A DNA stretch of 64,000 bases from Oikopleura dioica. Taxonomy: Eukaryota; Animalia; Chordata. Positions 3,134 to 7,686 of this stretch are shown piece by piece. A program made the position numbers and the translations under genes. The notes under the pieces are model-generated. The model saw only the letters and a list, made by a program, of their open reading frames with translations, made no database searches and had not been told where the DNA came from. Position 1 is the stretch's first letter. Each line of letters starts with the position of its first letter. Location: contig OU015569.1 of assembly GCA_907165135.1 (NCBI GenBank), positions 1,612,001 through 1,676,000 of the forward strand, read 5' to 3'.

Positions 3134-4181
3134 TCTCTATGTATTTGGGCACGCTGCTGCCGGGCCTGTCAGCCAGCAATCGGTCCGCGACGCAATTTCA
3201 AAGATCTTTTCTTCTGAGAGCAATGAAGGGAGCTTGAGGGCGACCCGTTTTCGTTGCGCAACCACCCCCCTTATCCAGTCTGCGGCGCCACCCTACAACT
3301 GGATCATCCTGAACTACCGCAGCCACCCTAAAAAGTATATTTCGAGTACACTTTTAGAGTGTAGAAAAGTGGGCGTTAAGCTATTTAAGTACTGACAACC
3401 CTTAAAATCGTTCCTTATTGACCTAGAAATACGCAGTATCCACGATGATAAGTATAAATTCCTTCGCTTTGATATTCACTGGGAAATTAAACAGCTGAGC
3501 ATTAATTTGATCCGGTAAATGACCCAAATTAGATTGAAAGAGATCAAAAGACGAAATGAGACTTTTGCCTTTAGGATTAGTCGCGGCTCAATCAGAGTAC
3601 TATTTTCAGCACTGGTGCGGTGCTTATTACCTTCCTATGCTCGATGATGCTAATTGCGCCAAGGAGGGCTCGATGAATTACTTCTACTCTTAAAATTAAA
3701 GCCTTAAAATAATTGTTTTGGATAATGATGCAGAGAATTGATTTAAGAGCCTCTGACTCAAGAAACTGGTTCATACTAGCTCCGCCCACCCTTAATTAAT
3801 TTACAATCATCGTTCCGATTTTAATTTTTCACGCCGATAATTAACCTTTGCGAAGTCATTGACGTAGCTTGCATCTTATCGATGAAAATTCGATTTTCAA
3901 TCGATTTACACGTTTTCTAGGAACAAGTTGTGTAAATAAGGACTTGCTGATTAAGCTTGCCTATCCAAGCAGAAGACGATCAGCGCGCCGGCAAAGTTTG
4001 CACATGATTTGTAAAGGCCGTAACAATCATGAACTTCTGGAGAAAGTTCGTCAATGACTTCGTAAAAGAAAGACTTTCCCTTCCGATTTGACTCGCGGCG
4101 AGTGTCCGGTGCCCGTGCTCACATCCGTCCCCAGTGGATACGTAGGCCAGTCTTTGAATAGAGAAGCAGCTCCATTGCCCC

Positions 4182-5401
4182 ATGGGGAGCCACTTTCTTT
4201 CAAAGCCGAAAAAAGCTGATACAGCTTTGGATCGAATTCAAGTGGACACTTCAAGGCTTAGTCACGTCACCGGCGCTGATGTCTGTATTGTAATGACGAA
4301 AAGGGTGAACATCAATGGAAAAGTTCGTCCTTACAACAAATACTTCTGCAATTCTAGTGCAGCTGCTAATACTGCTTATGAGACGTGGTCTTCTTCGAAA
4401 GTATTTGCAGCAGCAAATGCGGGAAGCAACATGCGAAAAGGTTCACCAACTTGCTCTAGCGGACGCTTTGGACTTGACGCCAAAGTCTGGGGCAAAAACG
4501 GATACACACAGCTTGCAGATCTCGTTACCGCCGTCGTTGCTTACGACGAAACAGCTGGTTATAGCTCCAATGGTCTCTCTGCCTATTTCCACGATATTGG
4601 TGGGAGAGATTCAATGAACTCCCTCGTCAAGGAAAGGGTCCTTGTTGTCTTCAAGCTTCAACAAGTACACTTTATTGATCCATTAAAAGTCTCCGTGGCT
4701 TGGGCAGTCCCAGAATTCGTTGGGTGGGAATTATGGCGAGTCAGTCCCCTAGTAAGCGATTATTACTTTCATCTGCAAAAAAGGAGAATATTTATTGATT
4801 ATTAGCGATCTGGGGTTGACATTTATCGACGAATACGGCGAAGCTTGCGTCGTATCAAGAGACAATCCATCTCAAGTGTATCCCAATTCACTGACGTTGC
4901 TTGCTCAGAGTGAGCTTTTAAGAAGACTTGTCCAGCACAACATCGTTGATGAAGGTGTCCAGTGGCCCAACTTAGAAGCTCGAGATCTCGAGCAAATCCT
5001 CTACGGAGCTGACGAGACGGGTTTATTCGGCTCTCAGCAGTGGGGAGGAATGACCGCGGATACAGCCATCTACCTACAGAACTCACTGAACATGCCAGAA
5101 GTAGAGAGGCTTTCTGGGGGATCGTGGCGAATTTACTCCAAGCTTGGCGCGGGTTATTCGAGCTCTCGAAGAGTTGGAGAGATCATTACACTCGCTTATG
5201 GGTGTTTCCCAGATCTTCTAAGTAAAATTCGTGTTGCTGCTATGAAATTAATTGCTTTCAGATGATCGCGAAAATTTCGAGTTTACAGTTGCTGTAAGAG
5301 GTTCAGTTGCCAACGATAGCTTTTTGTTCAATGCTGAGCAGCGGGTCAAGGATGCAATGGATAGAACTATTCAAGCTGTTTGGGAAGGAAGACTAAACTA
5401 G
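4182..5401 (+). CDS. Serine beta-lactamase/penicillin-binding-protein-like protein (class A-like motifs), spliced; 5' end unresolved
   Basis: SSSK (SxxK) at 4389-4400, SSN at 4563-4571, NSLTLLAQSELLRRL helix, GSWRIYSKLG (KxG) at 5140-5148; at least three short introns; stop TAG at 5399-5401. Confidence 0.7.
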
Positions 5402-7686
5402 TAACAAACTGGTATTGACTGCTTCAAATAAAAGATTAGTCAAATTTACTTCTGATTTATGTAAAAATTCGAAAGGTAGGGTGAATCAACGTACGAGGAC
5501 AAGGATGCCTGACGATGATTTACAGAATAGAGTTCTAGTGATGAAGAGATCCATGGGAGTTCTGGGACGAGTGAGTGACGAGCTGGAGTAGCGCCAGGAC
5601 GGGTCAAAGTTCGTAACGCGTTACGATGAGTTAACTGGGCGGGGAGGAGACTTTGCCACTCGATCAAGAGGCTACCAATGACAAACATTTGCCAAAAACA
5701 GAAAAGCAAAAAGAAAAATGAAAATGGTGAGCTGAAGAGAATCGAATTCCGCCGGAAGCGCATTTCCTACAGACACATTTTGAAGCAAATTCGACGTGGA
5801 AATTGATCATTTTTATGACCAAAATGTCAGAAAGTCTTCATTAGACTTGCTAAACTTTAAAAAAATTGAAAAATTCTTTAGATGTAATTAATAAAAATTC
5901 TCTCGCAGATAATTAAGAAATAAATGTTCATCGTAAATAGCCTTAAAAATTCAAAAGTAGAAAATTTAGCTGAATCGCGAATCAAATATGATAATTTTTA
6001 AATGAAAATTGAGAATCTTCAATGACAAAAAAAAACGAGGTCTTTGAAAAACGTGTCAGTTCACACTAAACTCGAGATAAGCGTGTTTGATGAAAACCTG
6101 CCTAGAAATTGAAACAGTAGGAATCAGGACAGAAGCAGAATTAGGTTGCCGTTTTGAATCGAGTGATTCTGGCCCGAGGAATGGTTTTTATCATTATTTT
6201 GTTTTGATTGAAAATGAAGGAATGTTTGGGTGGTCAACTGGCATATTTAGGGACAACAATGCTCCGATTTTTGGCCAACCGGTGTGGTGCAGAGGCAGGT
6301 GAAAAGAACCGGTGCAGTACCATCCGGCTGGCGGTAACACACCGCTTCTTTTACTACTCTGAGCCTCCTCTAGCAGCTCCACCTCCGCCACTTTCCGCCA
6401 TTCTCAATTTTTCTTAAGGAGCTCCCCAATTAACAAAGGAATTTCGCCAGCGAAGCCGCCAGAGAAAGCCGCAACGAGAAGCCGCAATCGAGAGAGAAAA
6501 AAATGAGAAACAATCGACGTTAACTTGGCCTGTGCAAAGCCCTAACATGTCTAGTAGCCCGGGGGGAGTGTGTAGACATGAAGGGAGTAGCACCCGCCAA
6601 GCGTTCGAACCCTCGACTAACTTTGAAAGAGAATACAGCGAAGATTAGAGAGCCTAGAGACAGCACCTCGCCTCTGAACTCGCAAACCGGCAAAGCGCAG
6701 CAAAGTTATTTTGGCTTTATTCAGCGACCTTTCCAGTTTTCCAATTGTGCGCCTCGTTTTACACCAATTCGATCGTAATTTAGCCTGTACACACGTGCAA
6801 ACGCAATGCTCAATTGGTCGAAAATGCCGCTCTAGCTCTAGCCTAGGTTAGAGCGGTTTTAATTTGAACGTTCAACCTCTACGACACTTACTGCCGGGCT
6901 TGATATTCAATTTGTCACATGCAAAAATCAAAATAAACGTTGGAAATTTTAAACTTGTTTTCACAAAGCACGAACTTGTCTAGTCTTTAAAATATCGACT
7001 TGTGCTGGAAAATCGGCAAGGCCGAAATACTCTTTTGTGAGATACAAAATTTCTGTAGCGAATTTTTAACATTACTTTTACAAAAAAATGATGAAAGAAA
7101 ATGCAAGCTTGGAGCAATTTCTGATCGTGATAGAAGCAGGCCGCTCCCCTGCCAAGATGAAAAATCCTCAGCAGCTGTCCGGACTCCGGAGCATTCCGGA
7201 AATTCAACCATCTGCGGCCACGCGATGTCCGGTGGAACATTTAATCACCGCGAATTTCGTAAAAGCAGAAAACAATCAATTTAGCAAACAATCAAAAAAA
7301 TAACAACGATGATCTCTAAGAACAGCATCAAAAACTTTTTCTCCAAGAAGCACGAGCGGTTCGACAAGAAAGAGAAGAAGCTGAACTCTTCCATGATTTC
7401 ACTGCCTTTTGGAGCAGTGAAAAACAGCTTTGACACGAGCTACAGGCAGTTCGACAGTGGCAAAGGCGATACACAAAGAAGACCCAACAACTCATCCTCG
7501 AATGGCTACCAACAACTGTAAACGCTACCGCTTATCATGATTCAAATGCAAATAAAAAAAGAAAAAAAAAACTAATTGATACCAAAAACGTATGATGATT
7601 AAATTTGAAATTTATTGAGAGGAAAGAGGCCGAAAAGTAAATCAAAGCTGAATGACTAGGATGACCGTATATGCCGGAATCGTCGT

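What the first reader, a model, noticed from the sequence alone, without database searches (positions are those of the whole stretch)
4182..5401. Intron-containing class-A beta-lactamase/PBP-like gene in an animal genome (horizontal-transfer candidate)
Seen: all three catalytic motifs occur in order. SSSK is followed by SSN 58-60 residues later, which matches S70 to SDN130-132 spacing. TQLADLVTAVVAY resembles the helix before SDN, NSLTLLAQSELLRRL resembles the TTP..M..LL helix, and GSWRIYSKLG resembles GWRVADKTG. Short spliceosomal introns and animal neighbours (bestrophin, WDR12) argue against contamination. Established: this motif set defines bacterial penicillin-recognising serine enzymes, and this class-A-like form is not a standard animal family. 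Inference: a domesticated bacterial or protist-derived hydrolase that might act on peptidoglycan or beta-lactams in a filter feeder.
Basis: partly seen in the sequence, partly recalled or inferred. Interest (0 to 1): 0.72.

Follow-up and report, generated by a model that had tools for sequence, protein, structure and literature searches.

The report
Foreign penicillin-binding-fold enzyme gene in Oikopleura
The tunicate Oikopleura dioica carries an intact, intron-containing, selectively maintained gene for a probably secreted serine enzyme with the beta-lactamase/penicillin-binding fold; the gene belongs to an unnamed family otherwise seen only in planktonic microbes and some bacteria, so it was most likely acquired by horizontal transfer.

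Summary
An AlphaFold model of the annotated product (P0063, 404 aa, pLDDT 94.6) has the beta-lactamase/transpeptidase fold, nearest class A beta-lactamases and PBP-A (Z 19-20, rmsd 2.9 A over about 234 residues).

Two corrections.
- **Gene start.** The gene runs from 3556 to 5401 in six exons. The ATG at 4182 lies inside a conserved GC-AG intron.
- **Family.** It is not a class A member by sequence. It gave no Pfam, NCBIfam or PDB sequence hit, and hhalign against TEM-1 plus KPC-3 gave 0.14% probability.

It belongs to an undescribed family of about 640 clusters. These come from microbial eukaryotes (chrysophytes, Arcella, MMETSP, ocean picoeukaryotes), Myxococcota, Alteromonadaceae and, by the ESM Atlas clusters' own taxon labels, Cyanobacteriota.

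The gene sits between WDR12-like and bestrophin genes on one side and RING-finger and PLA2 genes on the other, on a 13-Mb chromosome. It is syntenic and intact in the Norwegian lineage (pN 0.14, pS about 0.8). In the tree it nests among microbial-eukaryote sequences.

The substrate is inferred, not shown. Bacterial operon partners (alanine racemase, MR/MLE epimerase-like enzyme) and cell-wall-anchoring fusions point to D-Ala-containing peptidoglycan peptides. Expression was not tested.

The parts
3556..3663 (+). Exon 1: start codon, short hydrophobic N-terminus (probable signal peptide) and the first part of a conserved Cys-rich N-terminal extension (YYxHWCG..LDDxxCxK)
   Evidence: 100% tblastn match to residues 1-36 of P0063. 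The motif is shared with family members that have clear N-terminal hydrophobic leaders. The Norwegian ortholog has an ATG and a similar leader at the same place. No signal-peptide predictor was run.
3664..4072 (+). Intron 1, 409 nt, non-canonical GA..AG in this lineage (GG at the same place in the Norwegian lineage)
   Evidence: Implied by P0063 (..CAK|TFPS..) and the sequence. No RNA evidence.
4073..4145 (+). Exon 2: TFPSDLTRGECPVPVLTSVPSGYV, the rest of the N-terminal extension
   Evidence: Matches P0063 residues 37-60 and the family consensus FPxxxxRxxxCP.
4146..4215 (+). Intron 2, 70 nt, GC..AG.
   Evidence: Donor G|GC and acceptor AG|C are conserved between the Okinawa and Norway lineages. 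The interior is diverged, with a 4-nt indel, and has stops in Norway.
4216..4631 (+). Exon 3: beta1-beta2, helix alpha2 with S119-x-x-K122 (4389-4400), and Y-S-S-N (4560-4571). The end is as annotated; it may extend to 4637 if the conserved GT donor at 4638 is used.
   Evidence: 100% tblastn match to P0063 residues 61-199. Secondary structure. The annotated GA donor at 4632 is AA in Norway, whereas GT at 4638 is conserved.
4632..4689 (+). Intron 3 (58 nt as annotated, or 52 nt with the GT donor at 4638)
4690..4751 (+). Exon 4: SPWLGQSQNSLGGNYGESVP, the conserved GGNYGE loop (G212 and Y214 invariant family-wide)
4752..4805 (+). Intron 4, 54 nt, GT..AG
4806..5221 (+). Exon 5: helical domain remainder, then strand beta3 with K332-L-G334-A-G336 (K-L-G at 5140-5148) and R341
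5222..5261 (+). Intron 5, 40 nt, GT..AG
5262..5401 (+). Exon 6: strand beta5 and the C-terminal helix; stop TAG at 5399-5401
5427..5432 (+). AATAAA 26 nt after the stop codon, a possible polyadenylation signal
   Evidence: Read directly from the sequence. Not tested.

Best explanation
**Shown.** Window 3556-5401 (+) is a six-exon Oikopleura dioica gene, annotated as OKI2018_I69.XSR.g13698 (404 aa). Its product has the two-domain fold of penicillin-recognising serine enzymes. It carries a nucleophile-type Ser119 and Lys122 at the head of helix alpha2, an S/T-S-N loop, and a K-L-G-A-G strand. It belongs to a family with no Pfam or NCBIfam model, found in microbial eukaryotes and in Myxococcota and Alteromonadaceae, and also, by the ESM Atlas clusters' taxon labels, Cyanobacteriota. 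The gene is chromosomal, syntenic and intact in two deeply diverged O. dioica lineages. It is under purifying selection.

**Inferred.**
1. The protein is secreted. It has a hydrophobic N-terminus and six conserved cysteines.
2. It works through a covalent acyl-enzyme on Ser119, with Lys122 as general base, like DD-peptidases and beta-lactamases.
3. Its substrate is a D-Ala-containing peptide such as a peptidoglycan stem peptide. In a bacteria-eating filter feeder the enzyme would then serve digestion or antibacterial defence.
4. The Oikopleura lineage acquired the gene horizontally from a planktonic microbial eukaryote. The family is ultimately bacterial.
For: **Fold.** The AlphaFold2 model of P0063 with a 62-sequence family alignment has pLDDT 94.6 and pTM 0.93. 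Foldseek top hits are TEM, SHV, CTX-M and KPC, with E about 2e-6. VIA-align gives Z 19.0-19.9, rmsd 2.6-3.3 A over 225-235 residues with class A beta-lactamases and PBP-A; class D enzymes and PBPs score Z 13-16.

**Motifs.** S119, K122, S178, N179, K332, G334 and G336 are invariant in 200 rows. The segment W-x-I-x-x-K-x-G-A-G-x-x-x-S-R matches TEM-1 at 8 of 15 positions, including an Arg at K+9, as for TEM Arg244.

**Real host gene.** It lies on the 12.96-Mb record OU015569.1 between WDR12-like and bestrophin genes on one side and RING-finger and PLA2 genes on the other. The same synteny holds in the Norwegian assembly. Over 357 aligned codons, amino-acid identity is 78%, pN 0.14 and pS 0.80, which is saturated. 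Intron positions differ between the lineages.

**Distribution.** The profile search found 638 clusters at E<=1e-3. Named eukaryotic sources are Pedospumella, chrysophyte H1, Arcella and MMETSP. There are 62 bacterial loci. No named animal other than O. dioica appeared.

**Tree.** Oikopleura is sister (97/80) to a seven-sequence clade that includes a Tara Oceans compact-eukaryote contig. It is nested in clades supported at 97/89, 98/91 and 100/97, with bacteria outside. Forcing it outside costs 53 lnL, with p-AU 0.047.

**Substrate hints.**
- In 13-14 of 30 Alteromonadaceae loci the gene is followed on the same strand by an MR/MLE enzyme, alanine racemase and a Na/solute symporter.
- A BadF/BadG-type ATPase lies upstream in 12 of those loci, and one locus has an NlpC/P60 gene there.
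- One member carries three SLH domains.
- A cyanobacterial Atlas cluster carries PG_binding_1 in 69% of members.
Against: - There is no expression evidence. Four RNA runs labelled with the same species laid essentially no reads, probably because they come from another cryptic lineage.
- The operon context comes from the most distant branch, at 25-30% identity. That branch has D/N/E rather than S/T at position 177 and lacks the N-terminal extension.
- The Leu in K-L-G removes the hydroxyl that binds the substrate carboxylate in PBPs and beta-lactamases.
- Glu216, the only candidate Glu166 analogue, is not conserved in the bacterial clades.
- Most clade members are unnamed metagenome or Logan proteins, so an animal source for some of them cannot be excluded.
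- The AU test is borderline, and the tested group was chosen after seeing the tree.
- The Oikopleura branch is long (0.92).
Confidence: 0.55

Rival explanations
1. The gene is an ancient eukaryotic gene inherited vertically by Oikopleura and lost in nearly all other animals. It was not transferred horizontally.
For: The family occurs in several eukaryotic supergroups: stramenopiles, Amoebozoa and a compact marine picoeukaryote. Most clade members are unnamed, so their hosts are unknown. The AU test only borderline rejects Oikopleura branching outside the other eukaryote-type sequences (p 0.047).
Against: No other animal protein was named in three searches of a 5.8-billion-protein collection that includes NCBI nr and UniRef. 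The best non-Oikopleura identity is 48-52%. Oikopleura nests several supported nodes deep among microbial sequences. Vertical descent would need many independent losses across Metazoa.
Confidence: 0.17
2. It is a working beta-lactamase that destroys beta-lactam antibiotics made by microbes in the animal's house or gut.
For: The nearest solved structures are class A beta-lactamases. The K-x-G-A-G...S-R segment resembles TEM-1, including an Arg at the Arg244 position. A Glu (E216) is conserved in the eukaryote-type clade, in the loop that is topologically equivalent to the omega loop.
Against: There is no sequence-level match to any beta-lactamase model. The Thr/Ser of the K-T/S-G motif is replaced by Leu throughout the family. 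E216 is not conserved in the bacterial relatives. An animal has no beta-lactam target to protect. The bacterial context points to D-amino-acid peptide catabolism.
Confidence: 0.1
3. It is a serine hydrolase of this fold that acts on a substrate unrelated to peptidoglycan, such as an ester or amide (as in family VIII esterases or D-amino-acid amidases). Alternatively it is a non-hydrolytic binding or sensor protein.
For: The fold hosts esterases, amidases and sensors. D-amino-acid amidase 2dns scores Z 14.6, the BlaR1 and MecR1 sensor domains score Z 15-16, and an acyltransferase, 6kjh, also appears. The unusual K-L-G motif and the invariant Tyr170 and Tyr214 suggest non-canonical chemistry. 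Photosynthetic picoeukaryote-like hosts have no obvious need to digest bacteria.
Against: The closest structural matches are class A and PBP-A, not the class C-type esterases. The context with alanine racemase and an epimerase-like enzyme, and the SLH and PG_binding_1 fusions, are cell-wall related.
Confidence: 0.2
4. It is contaminating microbial DNA, an assembly artefact or a decaying pseudogene.
For: A near-identical fragment (P0001, 99% identity) occurs in marine metagenome assemblies.
Against: The gene has five introns of Oikopleura size and type and lies on a 13-Mb chromosome record among animal genes. The same locus is present in an independent Norwegian assembly. The reading frames are intact and pN is far below pS. 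P0001 reads through intron 3 into non-coding sequence, so it is most simply read as environmental genomic DNA of Oikopleura itself.
Confidence: 0.01

Closest known systems
Ambler class A serine beta-lactamases (TEM, SHV, CTX-M, KPC; Pfam PF13354) and the class-A-like PBP-A of cyanobacteria (PDB 2j7v)
   Same: Best structural matches, at Z 19-20 and rmsd about 2.9 A over about 234 residues. The order and placement of S-x-x-K, S-x-N and K-x-G are the same. The spacing from S to S-x-N is 58 residues, against 60 in class A. The K-x-G-A-G...S-R segment is similar.
   Different: There is no detectable sequence homology: the Pfam, PDB and hhalign searches were all blank. About 50 extra residues lie between motif 2 and motif 3, and a Cys-rich extension of about 55 residues is added at the N-terminus. 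Leu replaces Thr/Ser in motif 3. No family-wide Glu166 equivalent exists.
Low-molecular-weight DD-peptidases and D-stereospecific peptidases or amidases of the same fold (PBP4, PBP5, K15, DacD; D-amino-acid amidase 2dns)
   Same: Same fold and the same Ser/Lys acyl-enzyme motifs, with Z 14-16. This is the function suggested by the bacterial context of alanine racemase and an epimerase-like enzyme.
   Different: No match to Peptidase_S11, S12 or S13 models. These are structurally more distant than class A. Activity is untested.
LACTB, the animal mitochondrial serine beta-lactamase-like protein (PF00144, class C type)
   Same: An animal protein of the penicillin-recognising superfamily.
   Different: The subfamily is different, with no PF00144 match. 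LACTB is inherited vertically across animals and is mitochondrial (this rests on my own knowledge). This gene has no animal orthologs on record and looks secreted.
Cellulose synthase of tunicates, the established horizontally acquired gene in larvaceans (Sagane et al. 2010, cited in PMC13342648)
   Same: A prokaryote-derived enzyme gene fixed in the Oikopleura genome and equipped with introns.
   Different: It is a different enzyme, shared by all tunicates. The present gene is so far seen only in O. dioica lineages. Its nearest relatives are microbial eukaryotes, not bacteria.

Membership tests
Penicillin-recognising serine enzyme superfamily (beta-lactamase/transpeptidase-like fold) | Two-domain alpha/beta plus all-alpha fold | tested here: met
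   Model pLDDT 94.6. Foldseek gave at least 500 matches at E<=0.001, and the 50 rows shown are all beta-lactamases or PBPs. VIA-align found 118 chains with Z>=8, the top at 19.9.
Penicillin-recognising serine enzyme superfamily (beta-lactamase/transpeptidase-like fold) | S-x-x-K at the N-terminus of helix alpha2 | tested here: met
   S119-S-S-K122, with the helix spanning 118-135. S and K are invariant in 200 of 200 rows.
Penicillin-recognising serine enzyme superfamily (beta-lactamase/transpeptidase-like fold) | Second motif S/Y-x-N on the loop before helix alpha5 | tested here: inconclusive
   S177-S178-N179 sits at the start of helix 178-189. S178 and N179 are invariant, but position 177 is S/T in eukaryote-type and myxobacterial members and D/N/E in Alteromonadaceae. 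The register could not be checked in 3D because no coordinates were available.
Penicillin-recognising serine enzyme superfamily (beta-lactamase/transpeptidase-like fold) | Third motif K/H-T/S-G on strand beta3 | tested here: inconclusive
   K332-L-G334 lies on strand 328-338, with K and G invariant. The middle residue is L, I or M in nearly all rows and was not T or S among the commonest residues of any clade.
Ambler class A beta-lactamase (Pfam PF13354 Beta-lactamase2) | Significant match to the family's sequence model | tested here: not met
   No Pfam family at E<=10 for the exons or at E<=1 for P0063 and bacterial members. hhalign against TEM-1 plus KPC-3 gave probability 0.14%.
Ambler class A beta-lactamase (Pfam PF13354 Beta-lactamase2) | Omega-loop Glu166 (with Asn170) as the deacylation base | tested here: inconclusive
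   E216 in the GGNYGE loop is topologically placed like the omega loop. It is conserved in only 101 of 141 database rows, and it is A/E/S in Myxococcota and P in Alteromonadaceae. Spatial equivalence was not tested.
Ambler class A beta-lactamase (Pfam PF13354 Beta-lactamase2) | Hydrolysis of beta-lactams | not testable with these tools
   Needs nitrocefin or antibiotic assays.
Class C-type serine hydrolases / LACTB (PF00144) and DD-peptidase families S11, S13 (PF00768, PF02113), PBP transpeptidase (PF00905) | Significant match to the family's sequence model | tested here: not met
   No hit. Structural Z is only 13-16 for these groups, against 19-20 for class A.
Horizontally acquired gene in an animal genome | Physically integrated among host genes and carrying host-type introns | tested here: met
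   The locus lies on a 12.96-Mb chromosome record, with WDR12-like, bestrophin, RING and PLA2 neighbours. It has five introns of 40-409 nt, including GA-AG and GC-AG types. The locus is syntenic in a second assembly. Splicing itself rests on annotation and lineage comparison, not on RNA.
Horizontally acquired gene in an animal genome | Absent from related animals | tested here: inconclusive
   Only O. dioica is named among the animal sources. Most hits are unnamed, and other larvacean genomes could not be searched directly.
Horizontally acquired gene in an animal genome | Nested within a donor group in a phylogeny | tested here: met
   In the careful IQ-TREE it is nested under nodes supported at 97/80, 97/89, 98/91 and 100/97, among microbial-eukaryote sequences. 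The AU test of the alternative gave p 0.047, which is borderline and post hoc.

The most novel reading that the evidence does not exclude
An undescribed family of secreted PBP/beta-lactamase-fold enzymes is widespread in plankton protists and in predatory or scavenging bacteria. Its chemistry is non-canonical: K-L-G in the third motif, invariant Tyr170 and Tyr214, and no universal Glu166. The filter-feeding chordate Oikopleura captured a member from its microbial-eukaryote prey and now uses it as a gut or house enzyme to cleave D-amino-acid peptides of bacterial cell walls. That would be a new animal route for digesting peptidoglycan or defending against bacteria.
Probability: 0.3. Interest if true: 0.75.

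Novelty: new variant of a known kind. Interest (0 to 1): 0.6.

Why it matters
Well-supported gene transfers into chordates are few. For larvaceans, the main text of the published metazoan compendium cites only cellulose synthase.

This gene would add a second, lineage-restricted case. Its likely donor is a microbial eukaryote of the same plankton community, which fits a route through food.

It also brings to light a family of about 640 sequence clusters in a medically important superfamily. The family has no Pfam or NCBIfam model and no solved structure, and every source name seen for a member was "hypothetical", "unnamed" or "uncharacterized". Its third motif and its deacylation machinery depart from the textbook pattern.

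If the enzyme cleaves D-Ala peptides, it bears on two questions: how grazers and bacterial scavengers recycle peptidoglycan, a large pool of marine organic nitrogen, and how an animal can gain a bacteriolytic or digestive function. If it hydrolyses beta-lactams, it would be an unrecognised branch of the environmental resistome.

Tried and rejected
- **Sequence models.** Pfam and NCBIfam scans of each exon, of P0063 and of bacterial members found nothing.
- **Solved structures by sequence.** Profile searches against PDB sequences with A1 and A2 gave only chance hits such as RecX and calmodulin.
- **Profile against class A.** hhalign of the family against TEM-1 plus KPC-3 aligned only one helix, at 0.14% probability. 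I tried to collect diverse class A sequences from plasmids to build a better profile, but the search was saturated by TEM-1 copies and I abandoned it.
- **RNA support.** The only runs offered were labelled with the same species. Three bulk oligo-dT runs and one single-cell run laid 0-1 reads, so this was no test. They probably come from a different cryptic lineage.
- **Intron 2 alternatives.** I considered a 28-nt GT-AG intron and a 64-nt GT-AG intron. I rejected both because the GT at 4142 is TT in the Norwegian lineage, while the GC donor and AG acceptor are conserved.
- **A third donor for exon 3** (GT at 4666) would leave a 24-nt intron and was rejected as too short.
- **Literature.** Searches for Oikopleura or larvacean horizontal transfer of such a gene found nothing relevant.
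- **Earlier scan notes.** Those near the locus were unrelated, and a search by words was blank.
- **Active-site geometry** could not be inspected because model coordinates are not returned.
Full report
**What is in the sequence.**

A search with the first open frame identified the organism and the gene. The best named hit is an Oikopleura dioica protein. A later search returned P0063, "Oidioi.mRNA.OKI2018_I69.XSR.g13698.t1", 404 aa, from a 12.96-Mb record.

tblastn of P0063 on the window gives 100% matches for its exons and shows only one copy in the 64 kb. The gene in the record spans 1846 bases, the same length as window 3556-5401.

The exons are:

| Exon | Window coordinates |
|---|---|
| 1 | 3556-3663 |
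| 2 | 4073-4145 |
| 3 | 4216-4631 |
| 4 | 4690-4751 |
| 5 | 4806-5221 |
| 6 | 5262-5401 |

Their coding lengths add up to 1212 bases, which is 404 codons.

These encode a hydrophobic N-terminus and a Cys-rich extension that is conserved in the family.

**The ATG at 4182 is intronic.**

Alignment with the Norwegian O. dioica lineage shows that the G|GC donor at 4145/4146 and the AG|C acceptor at 4215/4216 are conserved. The interior has a 4-nt indel, and in the Norwegian lineage it carries stop codons.

- Intron 1 has a GA donor here and GG in Norway.
- Intron 2 is GC-AG.
- For intron 3, the annotated GA donor at 4632 is not conserved, but a GT at 4638 is. The product may therefore be 406 aa rather than 404.

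Non-GT donors are a known peculiarity of this species; that statement rests on my own knowledge.

All whole-protein work used the database protein P0063.

**Is it a real, functional Oikopleura gene?**

Neighbours in the record are a WDR12-like gene (NLE plus WD40) and bestrophin upstream, with RING-finger and phospholipase A2 genes downstream. The independent Norwegian assemblies carry the gene at the same place, after WDR12 and bestrophin. There it had only been annotated as fragments of 138 and 216 aa.

All parts of the protein are present and open in the Norwegian lineage, including the three motifs, and there are additional introns. Across 357 aligned codons, compared exon by exon, amino-acid identity is 78%, pN is 0.14 and pS is 0.80. 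Synonymous sites are therefore saturated and selection is clearly purifying.

Fragments at 74%, 85% and 99% identity in metagenome and Logan assemblies suggest further lineages. Contamination and pseudogene readings are excluded as far as sequence alone can exclude them.

Expression could not be tested. The four RNA runs offered, chosen by species label only, laid 0-1 reads.

**What the protein is.**

No exon, and no whole family member, matches any Pfam or NCBIfam model. Family profiles find no solved structure by sequence. hhalign against TEM-1 plus KPC-3, fetched from plasmid pKpQIL, gives 0.14% probability.

The fold is nonetheless unambiguous. With a 62-sequence alignment (A2), AlphaFold2 gives pLDDT 94.6 and pTM 0.93.

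- Foldseek's best matches are TEM, SHV, CTX-M and KPC, with E about 2e-6 and TM about 0.6 by target.
- An exhaustive alignment to 48,161 chains puts class A beta-lactamases and PBP-A first. They score Z 19.0-19.9 with rmsd 2.6-3.3 A over 225-235 residues. Class D enzymes, BlaR/MecR sensors and PBPs follow at Z 13-16.

The motifs sit where they should:

- S119 is at the head of helix 118-135.
- S177-S178-N179 is at the start of helix 178-189.
- K332-L-G334 is on strand 328-338.
- Two more strands and a C-terminal helix follow.

Read side by side, the beta3 segment matches TEM-1 at 8 of 15 positions, following the pattern W-x-I-x-x-K-x-G-A-G-x-x-x-S-R. This includes an Arg nine residues after the Lys, the position of TEM Arg244. 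The Ambler numbering comes from my own knowledge.

**Departures from class A.**

In 200 family rows, the following are invariant or nearly so: W118, S119, K122, D162, Y170, S178, N179, G212, Y214, G301, K332, G334 and G336. Against that background:

- Position 177 is S/T in eukaryote-type and myxobacterial members but D/N/E in Alteromonadaceae.
- Residue 333 is L, I or M in nearly all rows and was not Thr or Ser among the commonest residues of any clade.
- Glu216 sits in a loop topologically like the omega loop. It is conserved only in the eukaryote-type clade.
- The region between motif 2 and motif 3 is about 50 residues longer than in TEM-1.
- There is a 55-residue N-terminal extension.
- Six cysteines are conserved in the eukaryote-type clade.

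I therefore file the protein in the penicillin-recognising superfamily. It is structurally nearest class A but is a separate, undescribed family.

**Distribution and origin.**

An exhaustive profile search finds 638 clusters at E<=1e-3 and 225 at E<=1e-30. Every source name seen for a family member was "hypothetical", "unnamed" or "uncharacterized".

Eukaryotic sources that carry a name are:

- the chrysophytes Pedospumella encystans and "chrysophyte H1";
- the amoebozoan Arcella intermedia;
- MMETSP transcriptomes.

Two unnamed members lie on contigs with eukaryotic genes such as histone H2A, SET, PP2C, SF3b10, Ulp1 and PHD.

Bacterial members occur in Myxococcota MAGs, at 34-40% identity and including the N-terminal extension. 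They also occur in cultured Alteromonadaceae, at 25-30% identity. The ESM Atlas adds Cyanobacteriota clusters with TM 0.78-0.82.

With P0063 as query, the best non-Oikopleura hit is 48% identical and no other animal is named.

In a FastTree of 201 rows, Oikopleura falls inside the eukaryote-type clade, and the same holds in a careful IQ-TREE of 84 rows (LG+C20+F+G4). In the careful tree it is sister (97/80) to seven sequences. These include P0072, from a compact marine eukaryote found in Tara Oceans and other ocean metagenomes. This group is nested under nodes supported at 97/89, 98/91 and 100/97. Myxococcota, Bradymonadia and Alteromonadaceae lie outside.

Forcing the other 61 eukaryote-type rows together without Oikopleura costs 53 log-likelihood units. 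The p-AU is 0.047, which is borderline, and the group was defined after seeing the tree.

The simplest reading is transfer from a planktonic microbial eukaryote into the Oikopleura lineage. The extra, lineage-specific introns indicate long residence in the genome. Vertical descent with massive loss is not excluded.

**Likely function.**

The conserved Ser/Lys pair on this fold implies covalent catalysis through an acyl-enzyme. The substrate is inferred from relatives.

In 13-14 of 30 Alteromonadaceae loci the gene is followed on the same strand by three genes, separated by gaps of 3-75 nt:

- an enolase-superfamily MR/MLE enzyme, the family that includes L-Ala-D/L-Glu epimerases (from my own knowledge);
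- alanine racemase;
- a sodium/solute symporter.

A BadF/BadG-type ATPase lies upstream in 12 of these loci, and one locus also has an NlpC/P60 plus SH3b peptidase.

One family member carries three SLH domains. A cyanobacterial Atlas cluster carries PG_binding_1 in 69% of its members.

Taken together, these point to D-Ala-containing peptidoglycan peptides. The named carriers include bacteria-eaters such as myxobacteria, heterotrophic chrysophytes, a testate amoeba and a filter-feeding tunicate. That distribution fits a bacteriolytic or digestive role.

This is guilt by association from distant relatives. The hydrophobic residue in the third motif warns that substrate binding differs from classical DD-peptidases and beta-lactamases.

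**Verdict.**

The fold claim and the transfer candidacy are supported. "Class A" holds only at the level of structure.

The gene is annotated but uncharacterised. I found no paper on it, and the main text of the published compendium of metazoan transfers cites only cellulose synthase for larvaceans.

I rate it a new variant of a known kind, of moderate to good interest.

Noticed in passing
window 4626-4652 (compared with L070 about 6392-6418): A block of 26 of 27 identical bases (GTCAAG.AAAGGGTCCTTGTTGTCTTC) spans the exon 3 / intron 3 boundary in the Okinawa and Norway lineages, although synonymous sites elsewhere are saturated. It could be a splicing signal or an alternative coding extension (..RVLVVF..). 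In Norway a consensus GTGAGT donor lies further downstream in the right phase.
   Followed up: partly
window 3664 and 4146; L070 about 5313: There are two non-canonical introns in one small gene. Intron 1 has a GA donor (GG in the Norwegian lineage) and intron 2 is GC-AG, conserved in both lineages.
   Followed up: partly
L070 5960-6025, 6300-6347, 7414-7491 compared with the window: Intron positions differ between the two O. dioica lineages. The Norwegian gene has extra introns near residues 90/91, 182/183 and 306/307, so introns have turned over since the lineages split.
   Followed up: partly
L030 3575-9016 (Glaciecola siphonariae) and 13 other Alteromonadaceae loci: A conserved four-gene, same-strand cluster: the new family's gene, an MR/MLE enolase-superfamily enzyme, alanine racemase and an SSF symporter. 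A divergent BadF/BadG-type ATPase lies upstream. It looks like an undescribed operon for catabolism of D-amino-acid or peptidoglycan peptides.
   Followed up: partly
L029 6698-8203 (Alteromonas genovensis): A second serine hydrolase of the same superfamily (PF00144 plus DUF3471) lies about 1.7 kb downstream of the family gene, on the opposite strand.
   Followed up: no
L063 1-824 and 16833-19935 (the same chromosome, flanking the window's gene region): Phospholipase A2 genes lie on both sides of the locus, within about 10 kb.
   Followed up: no
P0197, P0199, P0202 (family members): Bacterial-looking members are fused to a BNR-like beta-propeller (below Pfam's cut-off), to PD40 repeats, or to three SLH domains.
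   Followed up: partly
runs X1, X4-X6: RNA runs labelled with the same species laid practically nothing on this locus at 90% likeness. They probably come from another cryptic O. dioica lineage, so they cannot test expression here.
   Followed up: no
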